From Mizuhopecten yessoensis (lineage: Eukaryota), in the NCBI RefSeq assembly GCF_002113885.1, contig NW_018404435.1:12422-76357 (forward strand): 63,936 bases of DNA, in the 5' to 3' direction. The translations under genes were made by a program, and so were the position numbers. The notes under the pieces are model-generated. The model saw only the letters and a list, made by a program, of their open reading frames with translations, did not search any database and was not told the origin of the DNA. This document shows positions 10,086-63,936 of this stretch, piece after piece. The first letter of the stretch is position 1, and every line of letters starts with the position of its first letter.

Positions 10086-10200
10086 AATTAACTATTTATC
10101 TTAAATTAGTCAACAAATAAATTGCATCGGTCCTTTCTATTCTGTTGCCTGCTAGCCGTATCAGCGTGCTAGAATGTGTGATATGCTAGTGTATGTTAGC

Positions 10201-14900: not shown

Positions 14901-14904
14901 AAAT

Positions 14905-15480: not shown

Positions 15481-16159
15481 CTACTTTGTGAACAACGATA
15501 TAAAATCGTCAGATGTCGATCATTACTGAATGTAAGTTATCCCTAACAGTTGGTTTTAGCATAGACAACACCCATAAGCCCACGGTGGATTTCCCCGTAG
15601 GCTTTAACACAACCTCTGCTTTATTAACGAACGGTCAGTAGTTATAAAAAAAAATGGGGGCAATCGTTGCAGATTGTATAAAACACATACATGTAATAAT
15701 TATTGAAAGTATATGTTGTATGTAGTATGTACCTACGGAGATTATATTAATAGTTTAAAGAGCGGTATGGTGCTATAATCAGAGTTTATACTGACAATGT
15801 CTGTATGATGATCGTTTATATGGATATTATACGCAGTTATGTGTTCTTAGAAGAGTTCATAAGTACAACGACGAAACGTGTGACACTATAACACTATTAG
15901 GTCGGGTGCCCACTATCGTGACGTCACAGATTGTGACAAGACAGACTTTGCAGCTCCAATAACTTCACAAATAGACGACTGGAAATAGAAAATAAACTAA
16001 AATAGGTGACGCAATACGAGTTGTGATACATGTACTTACACCGCCCTATGGTTAGGAGACCACTCTTGTGACACTGTAGAGCTGATTATTTACAAAATAC
16101 GCAGGATGTCTCGACAATGGGTTTCAAAAGGAGCAAATGTTCCGACAATGACTATGCTT

Positions 16160-22027: not shown

Positions 22028-25000
22028 CAATTTCAATAAATTTTATTGTCAAAGGACAAATGGATTGGGCAGCAGGCATAGCCTATTTAAGCCCTTTCCA
22101 AACATAGTAACAGACAGTGGTACAAGCATAGACATAGAACACATACAAACACATATAAACAAGTTGGTATTATCAAATTAATAATCAAATTAGGGGAAAC
22201 AACTACTAATACTCATTTTTATTATAATTGAATCTAATGGTTTGAATTCTAACCTTTTATTTTGATATTGAAAAGACATAAAATATATACCGGTATATAC
22301 ATATTATGAAGAGAAAAGAAAAATAGTTTGTTGATGGAGCTGCATGTATAAACATTTGATGGGATTAAATTACCGCACCCAACAGATACAGGCCAAAAAG
22401 TCCATTGTATCACACAAGGCCATCCACTGATGAGTTTGGAAATTCAATCCCACCAAATAGTTTAATTTATGCATATTAAACACAGGTTAGATATATAATT
22501 AACATGTTGTAAAGCTTTATATTCTTATTTATGTAGTTGTTTCCCAATATTTTTTAATAAAATAGTATAACTGGTCTTCTGAACCCCAGCCCCCCTCACT
22601 AACAATATTTAAAAATAAACAATGAAGACAAATAGGAAATATTAATATTAATATTCATGTACCATTTCTGGAAATCAGAAGAATTACATTGAGAAAAAAT
22701 AAAATGTAAATAAATAAAGTGTAAATAAATAAAATGTAAAATTTCATTCAAAATTGAAGTTAAATGTCCTGAATCTTCTAGAACTTAAAATGTAATTGGA
22801 TATAGATAGGAGAATATGTTTATTTTCATTTTCATCACATCTCTCACAACCATTTAGCATGACATCTAATGATAAATGGTTGTGAGTTTCATGGAATATA
22901 TTCTGAAAAAGTAGAATACGATCTTCAGTGTATTTGATACAATCATGGAAGTAATGAGATGCTGTTTCAAATCTAGAACCACAAGAACATGCAGAGGACT
23001 CAGTAAGATAATCTTTCTGACGGTCATTATTTAGGTTACTGGCCTCATTTCTCAACTGACAGAGAATAATATTAGTTTCCCTATTTCCTAAAAACTTAAA
23101 GACATCAGTTGTTCTTGTGTTTGAATTTGGAATAGGTGTTATTAACTTTTTGAACTGATAGGCGGAACGAATATTTTGAAGGTCTGAAGCGATATTATTT
23201 ATTTCATTAAACATGGATGGAAAAAAGCTATTAGAATAGTTAACAGTTCGACAAAGAGGAGGATCAAATATTCTAACTGATCTAAGGGGATATCTAGCTA
23301 GTGTGGGATCATGAAAATGTGACTCAGTGATTTCTTTCAGATAATATGGAGTTTCATTATTCATAATCTTGTACATCAGCATCATTTTATGTTGTTTTCT
23401 CCTACTTTCAAGAGGAACCCAGCCTAATTCTTTGTACAAGATATTGTGGGGGGTGCCTCTACGCAGTCCTGTAATTATTCTTGCAGCCTCTAGCTGGACT
23501 GACTCTAAGAGATTTTTTAGATTTTGAGAACAATTATCCCAAACAACATCTGCATATTCTAGTATAGGTCTAATATATGATGTATACATTGTGGTTAATG
23601 ACTGTCTGTCTAGTTTATGTTTCATCATCCTTAAAATATTAATTCTTTTGTATGCTTTTTGGTAAATATCATAAATGTGGTCATTCCACTTAGCATCATC
23701 ACTGAATGTCAAGCCAAGATGTTTATGTGTTCGGCTGACAGTAACAGGTTCATCATAAAAATATACATTTGGGTGATGAGTATTCAGTTTTTTAGAGAAT
23801 ATAACAGATTCTGTTTTATTTGGATTAAATTTAATATCCCATTTATTAGCCCAGAGTTGTATATTACTGAGATCATCTGTTAGGTTTTGTGCTAACTCGA
23901 TTGGATCATCGTCTGTTACAGCGTATAGAGAAGTGTCATCAGCAAACAGTTTAATTTCATGAGAAACACAGTCAACAATATCATTAATATAAAGTAAAAA
24001 CAAAAGTGGACCGAGAACCGAGCCCTGTGGTACCCCTGCATTTACAGGCCTGGATGTAGATATATATCCCTCAGTTAACACTCTTTGTTTTCTGTCATCT
24101 AAAAAATTTCTCAACCAACAAAGTAATTTCCCTTTGATGCCATATAATTGGAGTTTATGTACCAGTCCATCATGCCATACTCTATCGAACGCCTTGCTTA
24201 TGTCACAAAAAACAAATCTTAATTCTTTATACTGGTCAAGACATTGTACAATAGTATGATATACTGAAAGAAGTTGATTTATAGTAGAGTCCTTAGGCAT
24301 AAATCCAGATTGATGCATAGTAATAATTTCATGTGTAGTAAGATAATTCAACATGTACTTATATATAATTTTTTCTATAATCTTACTAAAACATGAAGTA
24401 ATAGAAATTGGTCTATAATTAGAAATTTCATTTGTTAAACCTTTTCCTTTATAAATGGCATTAATATTAGCAGTTTTCCAACTAAGGGGGATAACTCCTG
24501 TTTGTAGTGTCTTGTTGAAAAGCAATGTTAAAGGAAGAGAAATAGAATGTTCAAGTTGTTTTATTATTTTAGGTACCATGCCATCGGGTCCAGCTGGTTT
24601 ATTACTATTTAGGAGAAACAATTGGTCATGGACATCTTGATGTGTTATTGTTATGTTTTCCATAGAGTGGGGACAGTTAAATTCAATATCAGGAATAGGT
24701 TCAAGATTCTCAGAAGTGGTAGATATAGAGGTAAAATACTTATTAAGATATTCAGCTTTATCAAATGGATGTTGAATGAAACATTCATCACATTTAAGAG
24801 GGGGAATACAGTTACTTCTATTATTTGCATTTAAAACAGTTTTTGCAATTTTCCACCAGCTACTTGGAGAAATATTTGTATTAGCTAATGATTTTTGCAT
24901 ATTTTCAATATAATTATTCTTGGCCTCTCTTATTTTACTAATGACTTCATTCCTGATATGTCTGTAGTTTTCCCAATGACATGGTAAGTTACTTAACTTT

Positions 25001-26202
25001 GCTTTTCTATGTGCCCTATTTCTTTGTCTAATATTAAATCTAATTTCATTTGTCATCCACTTTTTATCTCTAGGCCTTACTGTAACATTTATACTAGGAA
25101 TACATTCGGATATTTGTTGATTAATAGCATTACAAAGAGTATTATTAAATTCATTACTATCTTGATTTTCAGAGATTGCAACCCAATCAATCATATTTAT
25201 GTTCCTATTCATTTTTTCATAATCTGCTTCCCGATAGAGTAATATTTTTTTCTGATAAGATTTTTGTTTAAAGACATCAAATGAGATACTGAATTGAATA
25301 AGAGAGTGGTCACTACATATGGGTGGAGAAACAGATACATTTTTAATTAAGTTTAAACTATTTGAGAAAACGATATCTAATGAGGTGGAAGATGTTTGAG
25401 TTATGCGTGTAGGTTCATCAACATAGTTTACAAGATTATATTTGGTCATTAGTCTACCAAGATGACTATAAGGTTGTAAGTTAATCATGTTTACATTAAT
25501 ATCACCTGTTATGACTATATTTAGATTAGTATTTATAGCTCTCTCAAATACAAAGTCTAGTGTTTCCCAATAAGTTACAGGCATTTCTGGTCTATAAATA
25601 CAACATAACAAGAATTTACGAGACCCAATACATACTTCAACCCAAATTAATTCTACATCATTATGTTCCAAGTCTGTTCGTCTTTTAGTAAAAATAGTGT
25701 TCTTGTGATAAATTAGTACTCCACCACCAGGGCCTGATCTTCGGTCTAGTCTGTCATGTGAGTAGGAATCTATGGTGATATCAGAATCTAATACTTCAGG
25801 AGAAAGATGAGTTTCTGTTAGACATATTATATCATTATTATTTAATTCAGCTTCTATAGTATCAATTTTATTTCGTAATGACCTAACATTTAGTTGAGCA
25901 ATATCAAGACTGCATAGAGGCCCCGGATTAAGTTCAATGTCATTAGAAATCAACAACAAAATATGAATTATAATATGAAAACATACATTTTTGAGGCTAA
26001 AAACATACTGGGAATTCAAAAAGACATATGAATGAAGAAGAAAAAAAAATACTTCCGATTTCCAATGTGTCCTATTATTAGATTGAAATTCTTTGTATCT
26101 ATCCATTATCAAATATCATGATTTGTAACAGTTGGGTGATGAGACACGTGGTACATACATGTATTAAGAAGTAATTTCCATTGCAAAGTTCAATCAAGGC
26201 AG
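22028..26202 (-). mobile_element. Young CR1-group (CR1/L2-like) non-LTR retrotransposon, single ORF
   Basis: Intact APE+RT ORF, ~715-bp 3' UTR ending AATAAA..TTGAAATTG, flanked by a perfect 13-bp direct repeat CTGAACAGCTGTT (22015-22027 / 26203-26215). Confidence 0.9.
22744..26112 (-). CDS. LINE ORF2 polyprotein: 2A-like peptide, AP endonuclease, reverse transcriptase, C-terminal Cys/His motif (first ATG at 26106)
   Basis: DIELNPGP; APE motifs LNVRSL, CLTETHL, GGGVLIY, TGDIN, PTRI, SDHSLI; RT motifs NYRPIS, DISKAFDRVWH, GVPQGSVLGP, LFADD, KHLG; C-terminal CSCG..ETASHYFHDC. 1122 aa uninterrupted. Confidence 0.97.
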   Translation of the reverse strand: MIMDRYKEFQSNNRTHWKSEVFFFLLHSYVFLNSQYVFSLKNVCFHIIIHILLLISNDIELNPGPLCSLDIAQLNVRSLRNKIDTIEAELNNNDIICLTETHLSPEVLDSDITIDSYSHDRLDRRSGPGGGVLIYHKNTIFTKRRTDLEHNDVELIWVEVCIGSRKFLLCCIYRPEMPVTYWETLDFVFERAINTNLNIVITGDINVNMINLQPYSHLGRLMTKYNLVNYVDEPTRITQTSSTSLDIVFSNSLNLIKNVSVSPPICSDHSLIQFSISFDVFKQKSYQKKILLYREADYEKMNRNINMIDWVAISENQDSNEFNNTLCNAINQQISECIPSINVTVRPRDKKWMTNEIRFNIRQRNRAHRKAKLSNLPCHWENYRHIRNEVISKIREAKNNYIENMQKSLANTNISPSSWWKIAKTVLNANNRSNCIPPLKCDECFIQHPFDKAEYLNKYFTSISTTSENLEPIPDIEFNCPHSMENITITHQDVHDQLFLLNSNKPAGPDGMVPKIIKQLEHSISLPLTLLFNKTLQTGVIPLSWKTANINAIYKGKGLTNEISNYRPISITSCFSKIIEKIIYKYMLNYLTTHEIITMHQSGFMPKDSTINQLLSVYHTIVQCLDQYKELRFVFCDISKAFDRVWHDGLVHKLQLYGIKGKLLCWLRNFLDDRKQRVLTEGYISTSRPVNAGVPQGSVLGPLLFLLYINDIVDCVSHEIKLFADDTSLYAVTDDDPIELAQNLTDDLSNIQLWANKWDIKFNPNKTESVIFSKKLNTHHPNVYFYDEPVTVSRTHKHLGLTFSDDAKWNDHIYDIYQKAYKRINILRMMKHKLDRQSLTTMYTSYIRPILEYADVVWDNCSQNLKNLLESVQLEAARIITGLRRGTPHNILYKELGWVPLESRRKQHKMMLMYKIMNNETPYYLKEITESHFHDPTLARYPLRSVRIFDPPLCRTVNYSNSFFPSMFNEINNIASDLQNIRSAYQFKKLITPIPNSNTRTTDVFKFLGNRETNIILCQLRNEASNLNNDRQKDYLTESSACSCGSRFETASHYFHDCIKYTEDRILLFQNIFHETHNHLSLDVMLNGCERCDENENKHILLSISNYILSSRRFRTFNFNFE

Positions 26203-47084: not shown

Positions 47085-50000
47085 AATCCAGAGTAAGGAA
47101 GGAAAGAGGAAAAGAGGGAAAAGCAATAACAGAGGGAATCCAGAGTAAAACTTAAAAGGGGTAAAGAGGTAATAGCGATAACAGAGGGAATCTAGAGTAA
47201 AGAGGCAATAGCAATAACAAAGAAAATCTAGAGTGAAGGAGGATAGGGGTTAAGAGGGGATAGCAATAACAGAGGAAATCTAGAGTAAAGAGGGAAGGAG
47301 ATAAAGAGGGAATAGCAATAACAGAGGAAATCCAGAGTAAAGAATGATGGGGGTAAAGAGGGAATTTAGAGTAAAGAGGGAATAGCGATAACAGAGGGAA
47401 TCTAGAGTAAAGAAGAATAGGGGTAAAGATGGAATAGCAAAAACAGAGGGAATCTAGAGTAAAGAGGGAAAAGGGTAAAGACAGAATAGCGATAACAGAG
47501 GGAATCTAGAGTAAAAGAGGAATCTAGAGTAAAGAGGGAATAGCGATAACAGAGGGAATCTAGAGTAAATAAGGAATAGCGATAACAGAGGGAATCTAGA
47601 GTAAAGAGGGAATAGCGATAACAGAGGGAATCCAAAGTAAAGAGGGATTAGCGATAACAGAGGGAATCCAAAGTAAAGAGGGAATAGCGATAACAGAGGG
47701 AATCTTGAGTAAAGAGGGAATAACGATAAAAGAGGGAATATAGAGTAAAGAGGGAATAGCGATAGCAGAGAGAATCTTGAGTAAAGATGGAATAGCGAAA
47801 ACAGAGGGAATCTAGAGTAAAGAACGAAAAGGGTAAAGAGGGAATAGCAATTACAGAGGGAATCTAGAGTAAAGATGGAATAGCGATAACAGAGGGAATC
47901 TAGAGTAAAGAAGAATAGGGGTAAAGATGGAATAGCAAAAACAGATGGAATCTAGAGTAAAGAAGGAAAAGGGTAAAGACAGAATAGCGATAACAGAGGG
48001 AATCTAGAGTAAAAGAGGAATCTAGAGTAAAGAGGGAATACCGATAACAGAGGGAATATAGAGTAAATAAGGAATAGCGATAACAGAGGGAATCCAAAGT
48101 AAAGAGGGAATAGCGATAACAGAGGGAATCTAGAGTAAAGAAGAATAGGGGTAAAGATGGAATAGCAAAAACAGATGGAATCTAGAATAAAGAAGGAAAA
48201 GGGTAAAGACAGAATAGCGATAACAGAGGGAATCTTGAGTAAAGAGGGAATAGCGATAACAGAGGGAATCTTGAGTAAAGAGGGAATAGCGATAAAAGAG
48301 GGAATATAGAGTAAAGAGGAAATAGCGATAGCAGAGGGAATCTTGAGTAAAGACGGAATAGCGAAAACAGAGGGAATCTAGAGTAGAGAAGGAAAAGGGT
48401 AAAGAGGGAATAGCAATTACAGAGGGAATCTAGAGTAAAGATGGAATAGCGATAACAGAGGGAATTCAGAGTAAAGAGGGAGTAGCAATAACGGAGGGAA
48501 TCTAGAGTAAAGACGGAATAGCGATAACAGAGGGAATCCAAAGTAAAGAGGGAATAGCGATAACAGAGGGAGTCTAGAGTAAAGAGGGAATAGCGATAAC
48601 AGAGGGAATATAGAGTAAAGAATGAAAAGGGTAAAGAGGGAATAGCAATAACAGAGGGAATCTAGGGTAAAGACGGATTAGCAATAACAGAGGGAATCTT
48701 GAGTAAAGAGGAAATAGCGAAAACAGAGGGAATCTAGAGTAAAGAGGGAATAGCGATAACAGAGGGAATCTTGAGTCAAGAAGGAAAAGGGTAAAGAGGG
48801 ATTAGCAATAACAGAGGGAATCTAGAGTAAAGACGGATTAGCAATAACAGAGGGAATCTTGAGTAAAGAGGAAATAGCGAAAACAGAGGGAATCTTGAGT
48901 AAAGAGGGAATAACGATAACAGAGGGAATCTTGAGTCAAGAAGGAAAAGGGTAAAGAGGGAATAGCAATAACAGAGGGAATCTAGNNNNNNNNNNNNNNN
49001 NNNNNNNNNNNNNNNNNNNNNNNNNNNNNNNNNNNNNNNNNNNNNNNNNNNNNNNNNNNNNNNNNNNNNNNNNNNNNNNNNNNNNNNNNNNNNNNNNNNN
49101 NNNNNNNNNNNNNNNNNNNNNNNNNNNNNNNNNNNNNNNNNNNNNNNNNNNNNNNNNNNNNNNNNNNNNNNNNNNNNNNNNNNNNNNNNNNNNNNNNNNN
49201 NNNNNNNNNNNNNNNNNNNNNNNNNNNNNNNNNNNNNNNNNNNNNNNNNNNNNNNNNNNNNNNNNNNNNNNNNNNNNNNNNNNNNNNNNNNNNNNNNNNN
49301 NNNNNNNNNNNNNNNNNNNNNNNNNNNNNNNNNNNNNNNNNNNNNNNNNNNNNNNNNNNNNNNNNNNNNNNNNNNNNNNNNNNNNNNNNNNNNNNNNNNN
49401 NNNNNNNNNNNNNNNNNNNNNNNNNNNNNNNNNNNNNNNNNNNNNNNNNNNNNNNNNNNNNNNNNNNNNNNNNNNNNNNNNNNNNNNNNNNNNNNNNNNN
49501 NNNNNNNNNNNNNNNNNNNNNNNNNNNNNNNNNNNNNNNNNNNNNNNNNNNNNNNNNNNNNNNNNNNNNNNNNNNNNNNNNNNNNNNNNNNNNNNNNNNN
49601 NNNNNNNNNNNNNNNNNNNNNNNNNNNNNNNNNNNNNNNNNNNNNNNNNNNNNNNNNNNNNNNNNNNNNNNNNNNNNNNNNNNNNNNNNNNNNNNNNAGT
49701 AAAGAAGGAATAGCGATAACAGAGGGAATCTTGAGTAAAGAGGGAATAGCCAAAACAGAGGGAATCTAGAGTAAAGAAGGAATAGCAATAACAGAGGGAA
49801 TCTTGAGTAAAGAGGGAATAGCGAAAACAGAGGGAATCTAGAATAAAGAAGGAATAGCAATAACTGAGGGAATCCAAAGTAAAGAAGGAATAGCGATAAC
49901 AGAGGGAATCTTGAGTAAAGAGGGAATAGCCAAAACAGAGGGAATCTAGAGTAAAGAAGGAATAGCAATAACAGAGGGAATCTTGAGTAAAGAGGGAATA

Positions 50001-50476
50001 GCGAAAACAGAGGGAATCTAGAATAAAGAAGGAATAGCAATAACTGAGGGAATCCAAAGTAAAGAGGGAATAGCGATAACAGAGGGAATCTAGAGTAAAG
50101 AAGGAATAGCAATAACAGAGGGAATTCTGAGTAAATAGGGAATAGCAATTACAGAGGGAATCTAGGATAAAGATGGAATAGCGATAACAGAGGGAATCTA
50201 GAGTAAAGATGGAATAGCGAAAACAGAGGGAATCTAGAGTAAAGAAGGAAAAGGGTGAAGAGGGAATAGCGATAACAGAGGGAATTCAGAGTAAAGAGGG
50301 AATAGCGATAACAGAGGGTATATAGAGTACAGAGGGAATAGCGATAACAGATGGAATCTAGAGTAAAGAGGGAATAGCGATTAAAGAGGGAATCTAGAAT
50401 AAAGAGGGAATAGCGATTAAAGAGGGAATCTAGAGTAAAGAGGGAATAGCAATAACAGAAAGAATATAGAGTAAAG
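47085..50476. repeat. 36-bp purine-rich tandem array (GAGGGAATAGCGATAACAGAGGGAATCTAGAGTAAA), spanning N gap 48986-49697
   Basis: 12-codon periodicity in the minus-strand pseudo-ORFs. Grades into GA-rich low-complexity flanks (46765-47085 and 50476-50760). Confidence 0.95.
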
Positions 50477-50860
50477 ACGATATTAAGTGGGGATTGAATA
50501 AGAAAGGTGCAAAACGAGACGGAATACAGTTAAGAGGGGATATACAGCAAAGGAATAAATTATGAAATGAGGGTTCCAAGCTAAGAGAGTATCGCCGGTA
50601 AAGAAATAATAACGAGTGGTCAGACAGGATTGAGGGAATAGAGTAAAGAGAAATTAAGTAAAGAGAGAGCAGGGCAAAAGGGGAAACAGGATATGGGTAT
50701 AGAAATAATTTCAGTTCAGTAGGAATGTATAATAAAAACTGAAGACGTAGTAAATTAGAAATAAAGTACACATCTGGACCAAATGTAACGTATATGTTAT
50801 TGTATAACACAAAGACTTTTAGTTTGAGGAAGGTATTGATGCCGTCAATTGTACCTTCCT

Positions 50861-50920
50861 GAACTTGAAACTTGAAACTTAGGACAGTGCGGACCGTCTT
50901 ACCTTAGCGGCATCCCTCAT
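50861..50920 (-). mobile_element. Possible extreme 3' stub of a LINE (RTE-like) with short (TTTCAAG)n tail
   Basis: Minus strand reads MRDAAKVRRSALS* followed immediately by GTTTCAAGTTTCAAGTTC. Recognised from memory only. Confidence 0.35.
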
Positions 50921-53900
50921 GGTGATGACCTTAATTTCCCGATCGTCAACTTTCCCTTTCTTGAGTGTAATACCAAACCTTAAGTGTTTACATTTCACAA
51001 ATGAATCGCGTTTCAAGTGCTTGCTCAAGACATCCTGATTTCCATGAGATGTAGACAACCAACAGACAAACGTACGAGGTTCTAGGACCTCCTGATTTCC
51101 ATGAGATGTAGACAACCGACACACAAACGTACGAGGTTCTAGGACATCCTGATTTCCATGAGATGTAGACAACCAACAGACAAACGAACGAGGTTCTAGG
51201 ACCTCCTGATTTCCATGAGATGTAGACAACCAACAGACAAACGTACGAGGTTCTAGGACCTCCTGATTTCCATGAGAGGTAGACAACCGACAGACAAACG
51301 TACGATGTTCTACGACATCCTGATTTCTATGAGATGTAGACAACAGACATACAAACTTACGAGGTTCTAGGACATCCTAATTTCCATGAGATGTAGACAA
51401 CTTACAGACAAACTTACGAGGTTCTAGGACATCCTGATTTCCATGAGATGTAGACAACTGACAGACAAACTTACGGGGTTCTACGACATCCTGATTTCTA
51501 TGAGATGTAGACAACCGACAGAAAAACGTACGAGGTTATAGGACATCTTGATTTCCATGAGATGTAGACAACCTACAGACAAACTAAGAGGTTCTAGGAT
51601 ATCATGATTTCCATGAGATGTAGACAACAGACAGACAAACGTGCGAGGTTCTAGGACATCCTGATTTCCATGAGAGATGTAGACAACCGACAGACAAACT
51701 TACAAGGTTCTAGGACATCCTGATTTCTATGAGATATAGACAACCTACAGACAAACGTACGAGGTTCTAGGACATCCTGATTTCTATGAGATGTAGACAA
51801 CTAACAGACAAACGTACAAGGGTCTACGACATCCTGATTTCCATGAGATGTAGACAACTTACAGACAAACTTACGAGGTTCTAGGACCTCCTAATTTCCA
51901 TGAGATGTAGACAACCGACAGACAAACTTACAAGGTTCTAGGATATTATGATTTCCATGAGATGTAGACAACCTACAGACAAACGTACGAGGTTCTAGGA
52001 CATCCTGATTTCCATGAGAGGTAGACAACCGACAGACAAACGTACGAGGTTCTAGGACATCCTGATTTCCATGAGATGTAGACAACTGACAGACAAACGT
52101 ACGAGGTTATAGGACATCCTGATTTCCATCAGATGTAGACAACCGACAGACAAACTTACGAGGTTCTAGGACATCCTGATATCCATCAGATGTAGACAAC
52201 TGACAGACAAACTACGATGTTCTACGACATGCTGATTTCCATGAGATGCAGACAACCGACAGACAATCTTACAAGGTTCTAGGGCATCCTGATTTGCATG
52301 TGATGTAATAAACCGATAGACAAACTTACGAGGTTATAGGACATGCTGATTTCCATGAGATGTAGAGAACTGACAGACAAACGTACGAGGTTATAGGACA
52401 TCTTGATTTCCATGAGATGTAGACAACTCACAGACAAACTTACGAGGTTCTAGGATATCATGATTTCCATGAGATGTAGACAACAGACAGACAAACGTGC
52501 GAGGTTCTAGGACATCCTGATTTCCATGAGAGATGTAGACAACCGACAGACAAACTTACAAGGTTCTAGGAAATCCTGATTTCTATGAGATGTAGACAAC
52601 TAACAGACAAACGTACAAGGGTCTACGACATCCTGATTTCTATGAGATGTAGACAACTGACAGACAAACGTACGAGGTTATAGGACATCCTGATTTCCAT
52701 GAGATGTAGACAACCGACAGACAAACTAAGAGGTTCTAGGACATCCGGATAGCAATCAGATGTAGACAACTGACAGACAAACTACGATGTTCTACGACAT
52801 GCTGATTTCCATGAGATGCAGACAACCGACAGACAATCTTACAAGGTTCTAGGGCATCCTGATTTGCATGTGAGGTAATAAACCGATAGACAAACTTACG
52901 AGGTTAAAGGACATGCTGATTTCCATGAGATGTAGACAACTGACAGACAAACTTACGAGGTTCTACGACATGCTGATTTCCATGAGATGTAGACAACCGA
53001 CAGACAAACTTAGAAGGTTCTAGGGCATCCTGATTTCCATGAGATGTAGACAACCGACAGACAAACTAACAAGGTTCTAGGGCATCCTGATTGTTATGAG
53101 ATGTAGACAACCGACAGACAAACTTACGAGGTTCTAGGACATCCTGATTTCCATGAGATGTAGACAACCGACAGACAAACACAACAGGTTATAGGACATC
53201 CTGAATTCCAAGAAATGTAGACAACCGACAGACAAACTTACAAGGTTCTAGGACATCCTGATTTCTATGAGATGTAGACAACTAACAGACAAACGTACAA
53301 GGGTCTACGATGAGATGTAGACAACCTACAGACAAACTAAGAGGTTCTAGGACATCCTGATAACCATGAGATGTAGACAACTGACAGACAAACTAAGAGG
53401 TTCGATGTAGACAACAGACAGACAAACGTGCGAGGTTCTAGGACATCCTGATTTCCATGAGAAATGTAGACAACCGACAGACAAACTTACAAGGTTCTAG
53501 GACATCCGGATTTCTATGAGATATAGACAACCTACAGACAAACGTACGAGGTTCCAGGACATCCTGATATCAATGAGATGTAGACAACTGACAGACAAAC
53601 TAAGAGGTTCGATGTAGACAACAGACAGACAAACGTGCGAGGTTCTAGGCCATCCTGATTTCCATGAGAGATGTAGACAACCGACAGACAAACCTGACAA
53701 GGTTCTAGGATATTATGATTTCCATGAGATGTAGACAACCTACAGACAAACTAAGAGGTTCTAGGACATCCTGATAACCATGATATGTATACAACTGACA
53801 GACAAACTAAGAGGTTCTAGGACATCCTGATAACCATGATATGTATACAACTGACAGACAAACTAAGAGGTTCTAGGACATCCTGATAACCATGATATGT

Positions 53901-55178
53901 ATACAACTGACAGACAAACTAAGAGGTTCTAGGACATCCTGATAACCATGATATGTATACAACTGACAGACAAACTAAGAGGTTCTAGGACATCCTGATA
54001 TCCAAGGTTCTAGGACATCCTGATTTCTATGAGATATAGACAACCTACAGACAAACGTACGAGGTTCTAGGACATCCTGATTTCTATAAGATGTAGACAA
54101 CTAACAGACAAACGTACAAGGGTCTACGACATCCTGATTTCCATGAGATGTAGAGAACTGACAGACAAACGTACGAGGTTCTAGGACATCCTGATTTCTA
54201 TAAGATGTAGACAACTAACAGACAAACGTACAAGGGTCTACGACATCCTGATTTCCATGAGATGTAGAGAACTGACAGACAAACTACGATGTTCTACGAC
54301 ATGCTGACTTCCATGAGATGTAGACAACCGACAGACAATCTTACAAGGCTCTAGGGCATCCTGATATCCATCAGATGTAATAAACCGATAGACAAACTTA
54401 CGAGGTCATAGGACATGCTGATTTCCATGAGATGTAGACAACTGACAGACAAACTACGATGTTCTACGACATGCTGATTTCCATGTGATGTAGACAACCG
54501 ACAGACAATCTTACAAGGTTCTAGGGCATCCGACAGACAAACTTACAAGGTTCTAGGACATCCGGATTTCTATGAGATATAGACAACCTACAGACAAACT
54601 AAGGGGTTCTAGGACATCCTGATATCCATGAGATGTAGACAACTGACAGAGAAACTACGATGTTCTACGACATGCTGATTTCCATGAGATGCAGACAACC
54701 GACAGACAATCTTACAAGGTTCTAGGGCATCCTGATATCCATCAGATGTAATAAACCGATAGACAAACTTACGAGGTTATAGGACATGCTGATTTCCATG
54801 AGATGTAGACAACTGACAGACAAACGCACGAGGTTCTAGGACATCCTCATTTCCATGAAATGTAGACAACTGACAGACGAACGCACGAGGTTCTAGGACA
54901 TCCTGATTTCCATGAAATGTAGACAACCGACAGACAAACTAAGAGGTTCTAGGATATCATGATTTCCATGAGATGTAGACAACAGACAGACAAACGTGCG
55001 AGGTGCTAGGACATCCTGATTTCTTTGAGATGTAGAGAACTGACAGAGAAACTTATGAGGTTCTAGGACATCCTGATTTCCATGAGATGTAGACAACCAA
55101 CAGACAAAAGTACGAGGTTCTAGGGAATCAAATTGAAGAGTTGTATGGTTGCAATCATGAAACATCGAGAAAAATGAT
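50921..55178 (+). pseudogene. Fossil Penelope-like element RT C-terminal fragment, split by the 57-bp array
   Basis: 50924-51027 translates DDLNFPIVNFPFLECN / VYISQMNRVSSACS. After the array, IKLKS / LYGCNHE. Collinear with the recalled invertebrate PLE motif DDFNFPIVNFPF..NIP..YGVYISQLIRYSRAC...KLKSSLRKFYGRHH. Confidence 0.8.
51029..55123. repeat. 57-bp tandem array (GGACATCCTGATTTCCATGAGATGTAGACAACCGACAGACAAACGTACGAGGTTCTA), ~72 copies
   Basis: Direct periodicity, with 56-59-bp variants. Confidence 0.97.
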
Positions 55179-55695
55179 TTTTCTTCGTTTGACAGGAACG
55201 TCGATGTTTGGGAAGCAAAACACGCTCTCCTTCCAGGAGCACCAGGAGCACCAGGGTGATATGATTATTGTTACCCGTAACCAAAACAACATAAGCATGC
55301 TCAAGCATAGATTATTGCTCCAGACAACTTTCTGGTAACTCACTTAAAACACGTAAAACGATCAAAACATCTAATCTAAACAGTGAAAACAGTAGTTTGC
55401 TTTAAGTCTCTTCAATGTTTTTCCAAAGCTTTGACGAAATAACATTTTATTATTAATTAATAAACGAAAAAATAGACTTGAGCACAAAATCCATGTTGTA
55501 CAATGTATATACGTTTGTATAATGTTTTGCGTATTGTAACTAATGCATTCAATTACCGATCGTTGGGTAGAAAGTATATGTTAATTAGCAGGATATTTGC
55601 TCACCGGTTATCAAATTACTGTCTGGTTTCTGTCATAGCTTTCTTTTATTACTATCAGAAACAGCTGAAGTTGTCCTGGCATTTCCAGCACACTT

Positions 55696-56230
55696 TGGTC
55701 TGGATGTTGTGCTATTTCGGTACATGCTCACCATAGTTTGGATGTTGTCCTATTTCGGTACATGTCACCATAGTTTGGATGTTGTGCTATTTCGGTACAT
55801 GTTCACCATAGTTTGGATGTTGTGCTATTTCGGTACATGTCACCATAGTTTGGATGTTGTCCTATTTCGGTACATGTCACCATAGTTTGGATGTTGTGCT
55901 ATTTCGGTACATGTCACCATAGTTTGGATGTTGTCCTATTTCGGTACATGTTCACCCTAGTCTGGATGTTGTGCTATTTCGGTACATGTTCACCATAGTT
56001 TGGATGGTGTGCTATTTCGGTACATCTCACCATAGTTTGGATGTTTTCCTATTTCGGTACATGGTCACCCTAGTCTGGATGTTGTCCTATTTCGGTACGT
56101 GTTACCATAGTTTGGATGTTTTGCTATTTCGGTACATGACACCATAGGTTTGATAATGTGCTATTTCGGTACATGTTCACCCTAGTCTGGATGTTGTGCT
56201 ATTTCGGTACATGTTCACCATAGTTTGGAT
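55696..56230. repeat. 37/38-bp tandem array (TTTGGATGTTGTGCTATTTCGGTACATGTTCACCATAG)
   Basis: About 14 copies. Confidence 0.95.
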
Positions 56231-56726
56231 CGCTATGAAGGATTGAATACAAAAGAACGTCGCTATGACGAAAAAATTCGTCAGTCGTGGATCACACCCT
56301 GTCCTTGTCATTCTCTATCTTTTCTCCTCGCTCACATAACAACAATGGCGGGAGGCTTCCGAGTGCAATACTACCATAGGTAAGGTTTTCGACTGGCACC
56401 TGTCATTATGTGCCTTGTTGATAATTCCCAAGATGGGGTCGTCTCAATAAGTATTTGTTATTATAGGTGTTGGATTGTCATTTCGTTTTTCCCGTCTGTC
56501 TTCGTGGTTTGTATTGTATTCTAATTGCAAATATTTTATATTTATTGTAAATAAATATATCCAAGTGTTTGGCCCTTGTGTCTGTCGTCAGTTTAACTAT
56601 AGTACACAATGATATCTCCATTGGAACCAGGGTTGGTCTTTACACGGACTATACGGCTGGGAGCTTGAGGTTAAATATGAATTCACCATATCCCTTTACA
56701 ACTGTAATACACATCACTCTATTCAA

Positions 56727-56965
56727 GGTTGGTCTGGTGGCGCAGTGGGTAGCGCACTTTCCTTTCACCAAGGCGGCCGGGGTTCAATTCCCCGATTGGA
56801 CGTGAAAAGGTATTGGGTCACCTGCCCGACCACGTGAGTCACATGGTACTCCGGTTTTCTCTCACAGGAAGACCCCCGCGAGCTAACATCCGGGCCAACA
56901 AGAGTGATTAGCATAAGTTGTAAAAAAAAAACGTGTTTCATAATTCTTCAAAAATAAATAAAGTT
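56727..56965 (+). mobile_element. tRNA-derived SINE, V-domain-like
   Basis: A box TGGCGCAGTGG (56738-56748), B box GGTTCAATTCC (56781-56791), central GGTACTCCGGTTTTCTCTCACA resembling the V-SINE core, and an A-rich tail at 56922-56962. Confidence 0.8.
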
Positions 56966-57392
56966 GATATTTCATATTTAAGGTTAGAAATACATCATTT
57001 GTAACACTAAGGGGGTAAACAACACTGATCCGTTTATTTATTTCATGGTGTGCGGTATTATGATGAAATAAATTATAATTGTTGAAATGGTGCATTTAAT
57101 TATTATATTCACGTTCAAAACAACAATATGATAATTGATTAAACTACAGTTTACGGTTTCTGTTACGACACGTACATCTATAACAAATTATAATCACCAA
57201 ACATTGGAACCGCCGCTTTGTGTGAACAAGGATAGTTGTTTTCTATCGTTACCATTCCCGATAGGTGATAAACACAGTGAGCACCATCCGTCACAGTGTG
57301 AATTTGATGTCACGTTAGGATTGGTCCCCGAGTAGTCAAACAGTTTATAACGGCTTTGTGTTCGGTACTTGTTGTACAACAGAAAGGCAAGT

Positions 57393-57840
57393 TTTAATGT
57401 ATAACACACGTGTAGGTTTAATGTATAATACACGTGTAGGTTTAATGTATAATACACGTGTAGGTGTAATGTATAACATACGTGTATGTTTAGTATAACA
57501 CACGTGTAGGTTTAATGTATAATACACGTGTAGGTGTAATGTATAACATACGTGTAGGTTTAGTATAACACACGTGTAGGTTTAATGTATAACATACGTG
57601 TAGGTTTAATGTATAATACACGTGTAGGTGTAATGTATAACACACGTGTAGGTTTAATGTATAATACACGTGTAGGTTTAATGTATAACACACGTGTAGG
57701 TTTAATGTATAACACACGTGTAGGTTTAATGTATAACACACGTGTAGGTTTAATGTATAATACACGTGTAGGTGTAATGTATAACACACGTGTATGTTTA
57801 GTATAACACATGTGTAGGTTTAAAGTATAACAAACGTGTT
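57393..57840. repeat. 24-bp tandem array (TGTATAACACACGTGTAGGTTTAA)
   Basis: About 18 copies; units carry CACGTG or TACGTG. Confidence 0.95.
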
Positions 57841-59311
57841 TGTTTAATATAAGTTAAATCACTGCGCCAAATTGGTATTGTATATATATATTGGTTTGTT
57901 TGCCTGCGTACTGCTTATGTAGAGGATGTGGGTATGTCCCAAAGCGGAAGTATAACAGAATTGAACCAGGATTGCTACCATCCCCGGGCCCTTTAACAGT
58001 GCACATTTCCCAATCAGAACCAGGCATCCCACGGAACGATATTGCTGCGCATCTATCCGCCTTATCCACGGAGAGTCCGCGTTATACAGGCGACAGCAGA
58101 AGCACGGGGTTTAGCGCTGGATTCTAGGCGACATTAGCCTCTTACGTTTCCGAATACTTGGACCTGCTGTACATCAGCTGTAAGCCTATTGCTGGCTTTC
58201 GACGATTCCAGAAGCAGCAGCAGTAGTAACCGTTGTTGAGTCCGAGCCGATGATTGGCTCTCGTGTAATTGGTTCGTTTCTGACAATATGTCTTGACGAA
58301 GTTTCACAAACAGCGCTGCCGAGACAGGAGTGACTGCTGCTGCTGCGTTCAGGCGGCTAGTTGTAACAAGTGTGAGCCACTGCGGCACCGCCTCCTCTCT
58401 CCTCCTCCTGTTCGTACTGCTACCTTATTCAAACTGTTATCTTCCACCTGGCTGTTTGGTGTTCTGCTACATTATTGTGTTCATCATATATAATTTCTTT
58501 CTTGTGATAAAGAAGTTTGGTCCAGTTAAATAGATTACCAAGAACGTTATGTGATGTGTATGAGTTGTTGAACTTTGAGTGTTATATGTTTTGCGATCAC
58601 TTACCTGTGCGTGTCAACACTTGTATGACGTCATATTTACCCGTACAGGGACTAACTTGGAGTATCAATGTGCGCTACTACTTAATAACACAAAAACAAG
58701 TTTGAAAGTTTGTACCCGGATGTTGTGAGTGGTGGCTATCCAGAAAGCCTTTTCCGTGTCCAGCGCTCCTGTACGGAAGGGGTAAAAGTATTAAGGGGAT
58801 ACCCCATGTGAAAGCTGTCCAGGTAAGTCCGTGGTTTCTTTACATGATAACGGGTTACATTTCATTAGTTTTTTTTATTGTATTATACAATGGAATCTTG
58901 TAAGTTGAAAGTCGTTATATGAAATATGTTGTTTTTCTGGAATTCCTGTGTTTCGATAACCGTGCGAAAAAAAATCTATGACGAGATGGGTCCTGTTGGA
59001 AAACGATTTTGTAAAGAGCAAACTATTTTGTCAAACAATGGTAACGCTTTGTATGAGCGGTGATAGTGTTTACCACTGTCACTCCAGGGGCAGGCAGCAT
59101 TGCAATGGGGTTTCCAATGTATCAACTTCACTTAAAGTAATAACTAAGTTAATACAATGTATCATACTTGGTAATTATTTTCAAACAATTGAGAGAGAGA
59201 GAGGTCTTAATTCTCAAAATACACATGAACATATCTATAATGTATTGTATATGTGACTTGCTCTATGACCGAATTCAAACGTAAACGTGACCCTTATTTG
59301 CTAAATTATCT

Positions 59312-59580: not shown

Positions 59581-62500
59581 AAAATATCTCCGGAATAAGG
59601 ATGTGAACCGACTTCAGTAAAATAACTCCGTAAAGATCTAAACGTAAACCGGTTCTTAAAATATCTCCGAGATTTAAAAATATACTGAATCTGGTAAAAT
59701 ATCACCGGAATATAAATGAAATGAATCTGGTTTAATATATCCGAAATATAAATTGAACTGAATCTGATAACGTATCTGCAGAAAATACAGAATTGAATCA
59801 GGTAAAGTACCTCCGGATTATATTAAAATGAACTGAATCAGGTAAAGTATCTCCGGATTATATAATGAACTGAATCTGGTAAAGTATATCCGAAATATAA
59901 ATTGAACTGAATTTGTTAAGTATCTCCGGAATATATAATGAACTGAATCAGGTAAAGTATCTCCGGAATACCAATTGAATTGAATTTGGTAAAGTATCTC
60001 GTGAATATACAATGAACTGAATCTGTTAAAGTATCTCCAGAATATAAACATTAACGGAATCTGGTAAAGAATCTCCGGAATATAAACATTAACGGAATCT
60101 GGTATCTCCCGAATATAAACATTACCTGAATCCGGTAAAGTATCTCCGGAATATAAACATTACCTGAATTTGGTAAAGTATCTCCGGAATATGAAATTAA
60201 TTGGATCTGGTAAAGTATCTCGTGAATATACAATGAACTGAATCTGGTAAAGTATCTCCGGAATATGTTATAAACTGAATCTGGCAAAGTATCTCCAGAA
60301 TATAAACATTAACGGAATCTGGTAAAGAATCTCCGGAATATATAATAAACTGAATCAAGTAAAGCATCTCCGGAATATAAACATTAACGGAATTTGGTAA
60401 GTATCTCCGGAACATAAACATTACTTGAATCCGGTAAAGTATCTCCGGAATATAAACATTAACGAAATTAGGTAAAGAATCTCCGAAAATATAAAATGAA
60501 CTGAATCAAGTTAAGCATCTCCGGGATATATAATGAACTGAATCTGGTAAAGTATCTCCAAAACATAAACATTAACGGAATCTGGTAAAGAAACTCCGGA
60601 ACATAAAATTAACTGAATCTGGTCAAGTATCTCCGGAATATAAACATAACCAGAATCTGGTAAAGTATTTCCGGAATATGAAATGAACTGAATCTGGTAA
60701 AGTGTCTCGTGAATATACAATGAACTGAATCTGGTAAAGTATCTCCGGAATATTAAATAAATTGGATCTGGTAAAGTTTCTCGTGAATATACAATAAACT
60801 GAATCTGGTAAAGTATCTCCGAGACATAAAATGAATTGAATCTGGTAAAGTGTCTCCGGATTATAAAATGAATTGAATTTGGTAAAGTATCTCCGGAATA
60901 TGAAATGAATTGGATCTGATAAAGTATCTCCGGAATATAAAATGAACTGAATCCGGTACAGTATCTACAATTAACTGAATCAGGTAAGGTGTCTCCAGGA
61001 TACAAATTGAACTGAATTTGGTAAAGTATATACGGAATATACACATTAACGGTATCTGGTAAAGTATCTCCGGAATATGTAATAAACTGAATCAAGTAAA
61101 GAATCTCCGGAATATATAATGAACTGAATCTGGTAAAGTATCTCCAAAATATAAACATTAACGGAATCTGGTAAAGAAACTCCGGAATATAAAATTAACT
61201 GAATCTGGTCAAGTATCTCCGAAACATAAACATTAACAGAATCTGGTAAAGAAACTCCGGAATATAAAATGAACTGAATCAAGTAAAGAATCTCCGGAAT
61301 ATATAATGAACTGAATCTGGTAAAGTATCTCCGGAATATGTAATAAACTGAATCAAGTAAAGTATCTCCGGAATATATTATGAAATGAATTGGATCTGAT
61401 AAAGTATCTCCGGAATATAAACATTACCTGCATCTGGTAAAGTATCTCCGGAATATGAAATTAATTGGATCTGGTAAAGTATCTCGTGAATATACAATAA
61501 ACTGAATCTGGTAAAGTATCCCCAAAACATAAACATTAACGGAATCTGGTAAGGAAACTCCGGAATATAAAATTAACTGAATCTGGTCGAGTATCTCCGA
61601 AACATAAACATTACCAGAATCTGGTAAAGAAACTCCGGAATATAAAATGAACCGAATCAAGTAAAGAATCTCCGGAATATATAATGAACTGAATCTGGTA
61701 AAGTGTCTCGTGAATATACAATGAACTGAATCTGGGAAAGTATCTCCAAAATATAAACATTAACGGAATCTGGTAAGGAAACTCCGGAATATAAAATTAA
61801 CTGAATCTGGTAAAGTATCTCCGGGACATAAAATGACATGAATCTGGTAAAGTGTCTCCGGATTATAAAATGAATTGAATTTGGTAAAGTATCTCCGGAA
61901 TATGTAATAAACTGAATCAAGTAAAGAATCTCCGGAACATAAAATGAACGGATTCTGGTCAAGTATCTCCGGAATATAAACATAACCAGAATCTGGAAAA
62001 GTATTTCCGGAATATGAAATGAACTGAATCTGGTAAAGTGTCTCCGGATTATAAAATGAATTGAATTTGGTAAAGTATCTCCGGAATATGTAATAAACTG
62101 AATCAAGTAAAGGATGTCCGGAATATATAATAAACTGAATCTGGTAAAGTATCTCCGGGACATAAAATGACATGAATCTGGTAAAGTGTCTCCGGATTAT
62201 AAAATGAATTGAATTTGGTAAAGTACCTCCGGAATATGAAATGAATTAGATCTGGTAAAGTATCTCCGGAATATATTATGAAATGAATTGGATCTGATAA
62301 AGTATCTCCGGAATATAAACATTACCTGAATCTGGTAAAGTATCTCCGGGACATAAAATGACATGAATCTGGTAAAGTGTCTCCGGAATATAAAATGAAT
62401 TGAATTTGGTAAAGTATCTCCGGAATATGTAATAAACTGAATCAAGTAAAGTATCTCCGGAATATATAATAAACTGAATCAAGTAAAGCATCTCCGGAAT

Positions 62501-63936
62501 ATATAATAAACTGAATCTGGTAAAGTATATCCGGAATATATAATAAACTGAATCAAGTAAAGGATGTCCGGAATATATAATAAACTGAATCAAGTAAAGA
62601 ATCTCCGGAAGATAAAATGAACGGATTCTGGTCAAGTATCTCCGGAATATAAACATTACCTGAATCTGGTAAAGTATCTCCGGGACATAAAATGACATGA
62701 ATCTGGTAAAGTGTCTCCGGAATATAAAATGAATTGAATTTGGTAAAGTACCTCCGGAATATGAAATGAATTGGATCTGATAAAGTATCTCCGGAATATA
62801 AAATGAACTGAATCCGGTACAGTATCTACAATTAACCGAATCAGGTGAGGTGTCTCCAGGATACAAACTGAACTGAATTTGGTAAAGTATATACGGAATA
62901 TACACATTAACGGTATCTGGTAAAGTATCTCCGGAATATGTAATAAACTGAATCAAGTAAAGCATCTCCGGAATATTTAATAAACTGAATCTGGTAAAGT
63001 ATCTCCGGAATATAAACATTACCTGAATCTGGTAAAGTATCTCCGGAATATAGAATAAACTGAATCTGGTAAAGTATCTCCGGAATATATAATAAACTGA
63101 ATCAAGTAAAGTATCTCCGGAATATATAATAAACTGAATCTGGTAAAGTATCTCCGGAATATATAATAAACTGAATCTGGTAAAGCATATCCGGAATATA
63201 TGATAAACTGAATCAAGTAAAGCATCTCCGGAATATATAATAAACTGAATCTGGGAAAGTATCTCCGGAATATATAATAAACTGAATCTGGTAAAGTATA
63301 TCCGGATTATATAATAAACTGAATCAAGTTAAGCATATCCAGAATATATAATAAACTGAATCTGGTAAAGTATATCCGGAATATATACATTAACGGAATC
63401 TGGTAAAGAATCTCCGGAGTATAAAATAAACTGAATCTGGTAAAGTATCTCCGAAACATAAACATTAACGGAATCTGGTAAAGAAACTCCGGAATATAAA
63501 ATGAACTGAATCAAGTAAAGAATCTCCGGAATATAAAATGAACGGATTCTGGTCAAGTATCTCCGGAATATAAACATAACCAGAATCTGGTAAAGTATTT
63601 CCGGAATATGAAATGAACTGAATGTTGTAAAGTGTCTCGTGAATATACAATGAACTGAATCTGGTAAAGTATCTCCGGAATATTAAATAAATTGGATCTG
63701 GTAAAGTATCTCGTGAATATACAATAAACTGAATCTGGTAAAGTATCTCCGGGACATAAAATGAACTGAATCTGGTAAAGTGTCTCCGGAATATAAAATG
63801 AATTGAATTTGGTAAAGTATCTCCGGAATATGAAATGAATTAGATCTGGTAAAGTATCTCCGGAATATAAAATGAACTGAATCCGGTACAGTATCTACAA
63901 TTAACTGAATCAGGTGAGGTGTCTCCAGGATACAAA
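59581..63936. repeat. 37/38-bp satellite (GAACTGAATCTGGTAAAGTATCTCCGGAATATATAAT); runs off the window
   Basis: Degenerate units from 59581, regular from ~59680. Long duplicated blocks (e.g. 60620-61020 vs 63545-63936). Confidence 0.96.

What the first reader, a model, noticed from the sequence alone, without database searches (positions are those of the whole stretch)
50921..55178. A satellite apparently born in situ from Penelope-like reverse-transcriptase coding sequence
Seen: the left flank translates DDLNFPIVNFPFL../VYISQMNRVSSACS and runs in frame into the first monomer (RHPDFHE). Variant monomers carrying 2 extra nt (GAGAGATGT, e.g. ~51663, ~52520, ~53660) read DFHERCRQPTDK, and many monomers have CTG (L) in place of CCG (P). 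The right flank resumes IKLKS/LYGCNHE. Recalled knowledge: invertebrate PLE RTs read approximately AC-GSYQ-DFLDRGLLLTRKLLNQGF..VKLKSSLRKFYGRHH here. The monomer aligns without gaps to exactly the segment missing between the flanks (DF, E/D-R, LT, KL). Inference: the ~72-copy array is not an insertion but an amplification of ~57-59 nt of the dead RT gene, with the 59-nt variant possibly ancestral. This preserves a satellite's point of origin with both parental flanks.
Basis: partly seen in the sequence, partly recalled or inferred. Interest (0 to 1): 0.8.

Follow-up and report, generated by a model that had tools for sequence, protein, structure and literature searches.

The report
Minisatellite born inside dead Naiad retrotransposon
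A 4.1-kb array of 57-base repeats in a scallop genome grew in place from a short piece of a dead Penelope-like (Naiad) reverse-transcriptase gene whose remains still flank it; this is a clean but ordinary case of a known route by which tandem repeats arise.

Summary

The left flank (50921-51028) is a 5'-truncated, frameshifted fragment of the C-terminal part of a Naiad-clade Penelope-like RT (DNA profile E = 4e-10). That match runs in register about 21-25 nt into every unit (p about 0.001-0.007). The right flank (55127-55209) matches the next downstream part of the same gene, on the same strand and in the same order (p < 0.001 with colinearity imposed, 0.005-0.04 without). Reads from four independent studies of one species carry both junctions unchanged. 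They give no sign of other loci.

In-place amplification of a piece of the dead gene is therefore the best explanation, at about 0.8.

Three sub-claims fail or stay open:
- The last 35 nt of the unit cannot be shown to be RT-derived.
- The alignment needs gaps of 2 nt and about 6 nt, plus 13-19 nt missing at the right junction.
- The 59-nt variant is probably derived. All four copies sit in one internal higher-order repeat, while the two edge units are 57 nt and 98% alike.

This is a single-locus minisatellite, not a genome-wide satellite. Tandem repeats derived from transposable elements, Penelope elements included, are already reviewed. Novelty: new member of a known kind. Interest is low to moderate.

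The parts
50921..51028 (+). Left flank. This is a dead, 5'-truncated fragment of a Naiad-clade Penelope-like RT, C-terminal region (family profile columns 59-96: DDLNFPIVNFPFL.., VYISQMNRVSSACS). It carries one frameshift and two 2-codon deletions.
   Evidence: hmmsearch against a family profile gives E = 1.2e-5 and 3.6e-4 for the two frames. The frameshift-aware alignment scores 44.8 bits. nhmmer over the whole window gives 50922-51049 at E = 4e-10. DNA identity to natural copies from other organisms is 64% at the median and 72% at best.
51029..55123 (+). Minisatellite of 74 head-to-tail units (49x57, 16x56, 3x59, 1x60, 5 truncated), with internal higher-order duplications.
   Evidence: TRF. 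Unit table and alignment. Segmental duplications m19-23~m29-33, m13-15~m55-57, m42-44~m46-48, m59-61~m66-68 and four identical units m50-53.
51029..51053 (+). Head of the unit (first 22-25 nt, GACATCCTGATTTCCATGAGA; reads RHPDFHE in the left flank's frame). It is homologous to the RT segment ..SYxDFLD.. that directly follows the left flank. The same head is present in every unit.
   Evidence: The forced in-register protein extension scores 4.1 bits, p = 0.006-0.008. In the DNA profile, flank+unit+flank scores 36.8 bits against 26.3 +/- 1.3 for shuffled or unrelated 57-mers, p about 0.001. The alignment is shown.
51054..51085 (+). Tail of the unit (GACAACC..GGTTCTAG; about 32-35 nt depending on where the head is cut). 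Its origin is unresolved. It sits where about 37-42 nt of RT should lie and ends in GGTTCTAG, which resembles the family's ..gggttcct.., but it is not significantly RT-like.
   Evidence: Tail-shuffle tests give p = 0.18 (m01), 0.67 (m74), 0.06 (m15), 0.012 (m08) and 0.007 (m12). The global banded test gives p = 0.27-0.66.
55067..55123 (+). Last unit (m74). It is 98% identical to the first unit (m01), and both are 57 nt with the CCAACAG variant.
   Evidence: Pairwise identities. The overall mean is 86%.
51655..51713 (+). 59-nt variant unit (GA added in GAGA). Sister copies start at 52511, 53442 and 53649. All follow the same GATATCATG..GTGCG-type unit, so they form one higher-order-repeat lineage.
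   Evidence: They score about 10 bits better against the RT profile. Taken alone, they hit profile nodes 122-178 at E about 1.
55127..55209 (+). Right flank. This is a remnant of the downstream RT coding sequence (..(K)FYGRHHDLVDRYGISVSQMTTDMF part; the window reads ..LYGCNHETSRKMIFLRLTGTSMF). It is on the same strand and colinear with the left flank.
   Evidence: DNA profile alignment to nodes 201-283 with 47/81 top-base matches, 26.6 bits. With a +/-20-nt colinearity band, p = 0/1500 shuffles and 1/1500 natural sequences. Unconstrained, p = 0.005-0.04. The control spacer 50700-50860 shows no signal.

Best explanation
A Naiad-clade Penelope-like retrotransposon inserted here as a 5'-truncated copy holding roughly the last 97 codons of its RT reading frame, then decayed.

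Inside that dead coding sequence, a stretch of about 57 bp was duplicated in tandem. The stretch began in the codons for ..S-Y-x-D-F-L-D.. just after the conserved ..YISQLIRYSRAC.. motif. The duplication was probably caused by replication slippage or unequal sister-chromatid exchange.

The array then grew to 74 units (4.1 kb) by further unequal exchange, including duplications of blocks of several units. The two edge units kept the founding 57-nt form. One internal unit later gained GA by slippage in GAGA and was copied three more times. About 13-19 nt of RT sequence were lost at or just beyond the right junction.

The array has no evident function; it is a neutral, locus-specific minisatellite.

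Shown: the array, the RT identity and colinearity of both flanks, the continuation of RT homology into the head of the unit, the unique junctions, and the higher-order structure. Inferred: the slippage or unequal-exchange mechanism, the order of events, and the RT origin of the unit's last 35 nt.
For: Family identity. The motif family is real and very large. 53 family-like copies came from a metagenome scan, and at least 7963 proteins were found in one capped search. Full-length relatives have an N-terminal GIY-YIG, a CxC motif and a C-terminal RT. That is the Naiad architecture described in PMC8557442.

Left flank. E = 4e-10.

Homology runs into the unit. p = 0.006-0.008 at protein level, forced and in register. 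p about 0.001 at DNA level against shuffled, dinucleotide-shuffled and natural 57-mers. Only 2 of 56 cyclic phases of the unit do as well.

Unanchored check. In a search of both strands of the whole 64-kb window, the best hits after the flank are array units aligned to exactly the predicted profile nodes 122-178.

Right flank. RT-derived and colinear.

Edges. The edge units are each other's closest relatives, at 98%.

Reads. Contigs from four runs of four studies of one species carry both junctions (50478-51058 and 55079-55700) with 0-2 differences. No variant junction appears, and array depth is only a few times the unique depth.
Against: The last 35 nt of the unit are not distinguishable from shuffled sequence for the edge-type units. 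The protein-level anchored test of flank-unit-flank was not significant (p 0.11-0.15).

The right flank gives no hit in nhmmer on its own. It becomes significant only in my own profile alignment.

The alignment needs several indels. No parent copy from the same genome could be obtained, so all comparisons are with Naiad copies from other organisms (49-64% DNA identity). No pre-expansion allele was seen.
Confidence: 0.78

Rival explanations
1. The first duplications arose during retrotransposition itself, through template slippage or jumping by the PLE reverse transcriptase while copying its own 3' coding region. On this view the copy was born with a short array, which later grew by unequal exchange.
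For: PLE insertions are known for complex tandem and partial-tandem structures (PMC8557442). The array lies wholly inside one element copy, with colinear flanks.
Against: Known PLE tandems are whole or partial element copies (pseudo-LTRs), not 57-bp internal units. Among 53 family-like copies from other organisms only one has a small tandem repeat, and it lies elsewhere. The higher-order duplications show growth after insertion in any case.
Confidence: 0.08
2. The array is unrelated to the RT. It expanded from, or was inserted with, foreign sequence in the middle of the dead RT fragment and replaced about 60-85 nt of it. The resemblance of the unit head to the RT would then be chance.
For: The unit tail is not RT-like beyond chance. 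The protein-level anchored test is not significant.
Against: The head matches in register with no freedom of placement (p 0.006-0.008; p about 0.001). Units taken alone find the predicted profile nodes. The unit is about as long as the missing RT stretch. The monomer is absent from the rest of the window.
Confidence: 0.08
3. The 57-bp repeat was born from another Naiad copy elsewhere, or belongs to a non-autonomous Naiad derivative that carries an internal array. It reached this locus by transposition or by homologous exchange between Naiad copies, so this is not the point of origin.
For: An unchecked first-reader note on another window of this genome (s1-554993) claims several minisatellites derived from a Naiad RT segment. 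Naiads are very abundant in bivalves.
Against: The junction contigs are unique and identical across four studies. No alternative letters are listed between 50789 and 55227, and array depth is about 3x the unique depth, against about 100x for a nearby dispersed repeat. All 18 runs that hold the stretch belong to one species.
Confidence: 0.06

Closest known systems
Tandem repeats and satellite DNAs derived from transposable elements. Examples are retrotransposon-derived arrays in plants (PMC7004042) and satDNAs from Helitrons, MITEs, SINEs, LINEs, LTR elements and Penelope elements, as reviewed in PMC12692304.
   Same: A short internal piece of a mobile element is tandemly amplified into an array, and the element's sequence is still recognisable next to it.
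   Different: The source here is protein-coding sequence near the C-terminal end of the RT frame of a Naiad-clade PLE, not a UTR, LTR, TIR or pre-existing internal repeat. The array stayed at a single 4.1-kb locus, with both parental flanks still in place.
Non-LTR retrozymes. These are tandem PLE-derived units carrying type I hammerhead ribozymes (bioRxiv 10.64898/2026.07.22.740005).
   Same: PLE-derived sequence organised in tandem.
   Different: There is no hammerhead in or near the array. Naiads lack canonical hammerheads. The unit is 57 bp of coding sequence rather than a pseudo-LTR or terminal sequence. There is no evidence of mobility.
Classical locus-specific minisatellites that grow by replication slippage or unequal exchange (established knowledge, including minisatellites that arose inside retroposons such as Alu).
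   Same: The unit is tens of bp, the array is a few kb at a single locus, variants are interspersed, blocks of units are duplicated, and the array edges are sharp.
   Different: The founding sequence can be named and both flanks of the parent are readable.

Membership tests
Naiad-clade Penelope-like element (flanking fragment) | Sequence homology to the RT-side C-terminal region of Naiad ORFs | tested here: met
   Left flank: E = 4e-10 by DNA profile and 1.2e-5 / 3.6e-4 by protein profile. Right flank: 26.6 bits, p < 0.001 when colinear.
Naiad-clade Penelope-like element (flanking fragment) | Permuted order: N-terminal GIY-YIG endonuclease, CxC linker, C-terminal RT (PMC8557442) | tested here: inconclusive
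   Met in full-length relatives. P0032 has GIY-YIG at residues 129-219 (26.4 bits, above the cut-off) and RVT_1 at 741-845. L068 has GIY-YIG at E = 0.009 and RVT_1, and its translation contains ..DCTC... The window's copy is 5'-truncated, so its own N-terminal part cannot be seen.
Naiad-clade Penelope-like element (flanking fragment) | No canonical hammerhead ribozyme; frequent 5' truncation | tested here: met
   No Rfam hammerhead at the gathering threshold in the whole window, or at E <= 5 in 50400-57000. The homology starts at profile column 59 with nothing upstream.
TE-derived tandem repeat born in place | Both flanks of the array are colinear, same-strand parts of one element copy | tested here: met
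   Left flank matches profile nodes 2-116 and right flank matches nodes 201-283 of the same DNA profile.
TE-derived tandem repeat born in place | The repeat unit is homologous to the element segment between the flanks | tested here: inconclusive
   The head (22-25 nt) meets this, at p about 0.001-0.007. The tail (35 nt) is not separable from shuffles for the edge-type units.
TE-derived tandem repeat born in place | The array and its junctions are unique to this locus | tested here: met
   Within the limits of contig data: identical junction contigs in 4 studies, no variant junctions, modest array depth, one species only. A whole-assembly search was not possible.
Satellite DNA in the strict sense (abundant, long arrays, often many loci) | High genomic abundance | tested here: not met
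   The array is 4.1 kb. Its summed contig depth is about 47, against 16 for unique flank and about 2000 for a neighbouring dispersed repeat.
Non-LTR retrozyme | A type I hammerhead ribozyme in each tandem unit | tested here: not met
   No hammerhead match. The 57-nt unit lacks the motif.

The most novel reading that the evidence does not exclude
The C-terminal RT coding segment of Naiad elements may be a recurrent birthplace of minisatellites in this scallop genome. An unchecked note on another window suggests this. A possible cause is a 7-8-nt direct repeat (GGTTCCT) that lies about 61 nt apart in many family copies, close to the two ends of the unit. If so, an abundant retroelement would be seeding much of the genome's striking minisatellite load.
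Probability: 0.1. Interest if true: 0.55.

Novelty: new member of a known kind. Interest (0 to 1): 0.3.

Why it matters
This is a tidy natural example of how a tandem array starts. The founding sequence, a dead reverse-transcriptase gene, is still legible on both sides and inside each unit. The edge units preserve the founding form while the interior has diversified and duplicated in blocks. That makes the locus useful for teaching and for calibrating models of minisatellite growth in bivalves, whose genomes are rich in both Naiad elements and tandem repeats. It does not reveal a new kind of element or mechanism.

Tried and rejected
- Pfam on the short flank peptides gave nothing.
- The ESM Atlas search with the 35-aa left piece gave only sub-threshold noise.
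- The word-indexed protein search with an X-joined flank reading found no candidate in the allowed length range.
- The viral-contig scan with the degenerate FPIVNFPF pattern returned one chance match in a phage.
- blastn of the flanks against the metagenome loci matched only the selected motif itself; those copies are too distant.
- The protein-profile, frameshift-aware alignment of flank-unit-flank reached only to ..DF and did not beat shuffles overall. It also missed the right flank. DNA profiles had more power.
- Replacing the unit tail by N to isolate the right flank was uninformative, because nhmmer would not bridge the N run.
- The flanks are not decayed monomers, and the spacers are not repeated elsewhere in the window.
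- I tried to obtain Naiad copies from the same species. Three contig look-ups gave unnamed ENA assemblies. A third protein search gave at least 7963 relatives but no species names. No same-genome parent was therefore compared.
- The direct-repeat (GGTTCCT) slippage idea: the repeat exists in other organisms' copies, but the window's own junctions keep only 1-2 nt of microhomology. It stays a speculation.
- A recurrent hotspot is not seen in 53 copies from other organisms. The other arrays of this window show no Naiad similarity.
I re-ran it reading the sequence from file.
- I printed no consensus of the element.
Full report
**The array.** TRF reports a 57-bp array from 51029 to about 55124. 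Splitting it at the conserved unit end gives 74 units at 51029-55123: 49 of 57 nt, 16 of 56, 3 of 59, 1 of 60 and 5 truncated. Mean pairwise identity is 86%. The window as a whole is unusually rich in unrelated minisatellites with periods of 43, 21, 32, 39 (19 kb), 36, 57, 37, 24 and 37 bp. Earlier notes of this scan say the genome is a scallop. The 2-nt-longer variants are at 51672, 52528, 53666 and 53459. The C-to-T variant of the CCG site is in 28 of 74 units.

**What the flanks belong to.** Pfam, the Atlas and a word-indexed protein search could not place the short peptides. A degenerate DNA pattern for FPIVNFPF scanned against metagenome contigs returned 120 loci. About half of them carry the same conserved C-terminal domain..YDKRDDFxFPIVNFPF..YGVYISQLIRYSRAC..DFLDRG..LT.KLL.QG..KLKSSLRKFYGRHH..DMF.

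One locus, L068, holds a 1000-codon ORF with this domain at its very end. That ORF has an RT domain in its C-terminal half and a GIY-YIG-like segment near the N-terminus. A 999-aa relative, P0032, has GIY-YIG above Pfam's cut-off at residues 129-219 and RVT_1 at 741-845. This permuted order, with a CxC linker, no hammerhead, frequent 5' truncation and dominance in bivalves, defines the Naiad clade of Penelope-like elements (PMC8557442). The family is enormous: a capped search returned at least 7963 relatives.

**Left flank.** A protein profile of 121 natural C-termini matches the two left-flank frames at E = 1.2e-5 and 3.6e-4. A frameshift-aware alignment gives 44.8 bits over profile columns 59-96, with one frameshift and two 2-codon deletions. 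A DNA profile was built from 31 natural copies, all from other organisms. In a search of both strands of the whole window it finds 50922-51049 at E = 4e-10. Nothing upstream matches, so the copy is 5'-truncated at about 50921.

**Is the unit RT-derived?** The left-flank frame runs into unit 1 as RHPDFHE, opposite the family's S-Y-x-D-F-[ILV]-x.
- Scoring this forced, in-register extension gives 4.1 bits, p = 0.006-0.008 against unrelated window DNA or shuffled units. No other cyclic phase of the unit does as well.
- At DNA level, left flank + unit 1 + right flank scores 36.8 bits. Replacing the unit with mononucleotide shuffles, dinucleotide shuffles or natural 57-mers gives 26.3 +/- 1.3 bits, p about 0.001.
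- The alignment shows ATCCTGATTTCCATGAGA against the profile's atcatgAttTccttgataga, followed by a 2-nt gap.
- In the unanchored whole-window search, the three best hits after the flank are the 59/60-nt units. They align to profile nodes 122-178, which is the predicted segment. Each has E about 1 and is not significant alone.

The signal sits in the first 22-25 nt. With the head held fixed and the last 35 nt shuffled, p is 0.18 for unit 1, 0.67 for the last unit, 0.06 for m15, 0.012 for m08 and 0.007 for m12. A global banded test of the tail gives p = 0.27-0.66. This part of the gene is poorly conserved even between family members: median DNA identity over the unit segment (nodes 117-178) is 56%, against 49-53% for the window's unit. 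Power is therefore low. The tail may be a diverged RT remnant or something else.

**Right flank.** nhmmer alone does not report it. A profile alignment of its first 100 nt restricted to a +/-20-nt colinear band gives 26.6 bits, against 12.8 +/- 2.6 for shuffles: 0 of 1500 shuffles and 1 of 1500 natural sequences reach it. It covers 55127-55209 against nodes 201-283, with 47 of 81 top-base matches. Without any positional constraint the same alignment is still the best, at p = 0.005-0.04. A control spacer upstream of the element shows nothing.

This corresponds to ..FYGRHHDLVDRYGISVSQMTTDMF; the window reads ..LYGCNHETSRKMIFLRLTGTSMF in the 55126 frame. IKLKS is ambiguous. nhmmer pairs AAATTGAAG with the family's KLK codons and then needs a 13-nt deletion. 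My alignment instead starts the flank in the SSLRK codons, which leaves about 19 nt missing at the junction.

**History of the array.** The first and last units are each other's closest relatives, at 98%. Both are 57 nt with the CCAACAG variant, while the interior averages 86% identity. The interior contains duplicated blocks: m19-23~m29-33, m13-15~m55-57, m42-44~m46-48 and m59-61~m66-68. It also has four identical units, m50-53.

All four 59/60-nt units follow the same distinctive GATATCATG..GTGCG unit. They therefore go back to one GA gain in the slippage-prone GAGA, copied by block duplication. They do fit the RT spacing better, by about 10 bits. This leaves a small chance that they preserve the original spacing. 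Even so, their internal, single-lineage distribution and the 57-nt edges make 'derived' the more economical reading. The dead copy has other frameshifts, so it can simply have lost 2 nt before amplification. CCG to CTG is ordinary CpG decay and says nothing about ancestry.

**Independent data.** All 18 public runs that hold the stretch are of one species, from six studies. Contigs of four runs from four studies were laid at 80% likeness. They cover both junctions (50478-51058 and 55079-55700) with 0-2 differences and list no alternative letters between 50789 and 55227. Summed depth on the array is about three times that of the unique flank, compared with about 100 times for a dispersed repeat at 55286-55497. 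No contig joins the two flanks, so no pre-expansion allele was seen. The few joints listed have 21-nt sides and are unreliable by the tool's own warning. This fits a single, fixed locus.

**Mechanism and rivals.** The best reading, at about 0.78, has three steps. A 5'-truncated Naiad copy decayed. A 57-bp stretch of it was then duplicated by slippage or unequal exchange. The array grew by further unequal exchange, with a small loss at the right junction.

The rivals are as follows:
- The first duplication arose during reverse transcription (about 0.08).
- The array is unrelated and the head match is chance (about 0.08).
- The repeat was born at another Naiad copy and moved here (about 0.06).

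Many family copies from other organisms carry GGTTCCT twice, about 61 nt apart, close to the positions of the unit's two ends. This would be a natural slippage substrate. The window's own junctions keep only 1-2 nt of microhomology, so it remains speculation. No recurrent array at this position is seen in 53 copies from other organisms. The window's other arrays have no Naiad similarity.

**Comparison with what is known.** That tandem repeats arise from pieces of mobile elements, Penelope elements included, is reviewed knowledge (PMC12692304; bioRxiv 10.64898/2026.07.22.740005; PMC7004042). This case differs in three ways: the source is coding sequence of a Naiad RT, the array is a single-locus minisatellite, and both parental flanks survive. 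It is not a retrozyme, because it has no hammerhead. It is not a satellite in the abundance sense.

**Limits.** No Naiad copy from the same genome could be fetched. All homology tests therefore use distant copies.

Noticed in passing
window 55286-55497: A very high-copy dispersed repeat sits in the right flank. Summed contig depth is about 2000 against 16-22 for unique DNA, with dozens of variant contigs at 80-85% likeness. The ends of the family's contigs form an inverted pair (..CATGGATTCTGTGCTCAA.. / ..TTGAGCACAAAATCCATG), which suggests a MITE of about 200 bp inserted 160 nt beyond the array.
   Followed up: partly
window 56732-56802 (+): A tRNA-Glu(TTC) is called by both Rfam (37.8 bits) and ARAGORN. 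It lies between the 37-bp and 24-bp arrays and could be a gene or the head of a tRNA-derived SINE.
   Followed up: no
window 22744-26112 (-): An intact 1122-codon ORF of a non-LTR retrotransposon (Exo_endo_phos plus RVT_1), unrelated to the Naiad fragment.
   Followed up: partly
window 10194-15481, 27356-50477, 55701-56230, 57393-57848, 59657-63896: At least eight further, mutually unrelated minisatellite arrays lie in the window, with periods of 43, 21, 32, 39 (19 kb, strong GC skew), 36, 37, 24 and 37 bp. None shows similarity to the Naiad profile. An assembly gap (N run, 48986-49697) lies inside the 36-bp array.
   Followed up: partly
window 51029-51256 and 55067-55123: The edge units m01, m03, m04 and m74 are 96-98% alike across 4 kb, while interior units average 86%. 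The interior seems to mutate or turn over much faster than the edges. I have no tested explanation for the size of this contrast.
   Followed up: partly
L002-L121 (JYMV01... contigs): One 'metagenome' project (JYMV01) supplied dozens of decayed Naiad copies. It evidently contains much invertebrate host DNA, probably from a bivalve.
   Followed up: no
L037:571-661: This is the only other tandem repeat found near the C-terminal RT region among 53 family-like copies. It is 31 bp x 2.9, about 190 nt downstream of the FPIVNFPF motif, at a different position from the window's array.
   Followed up: no
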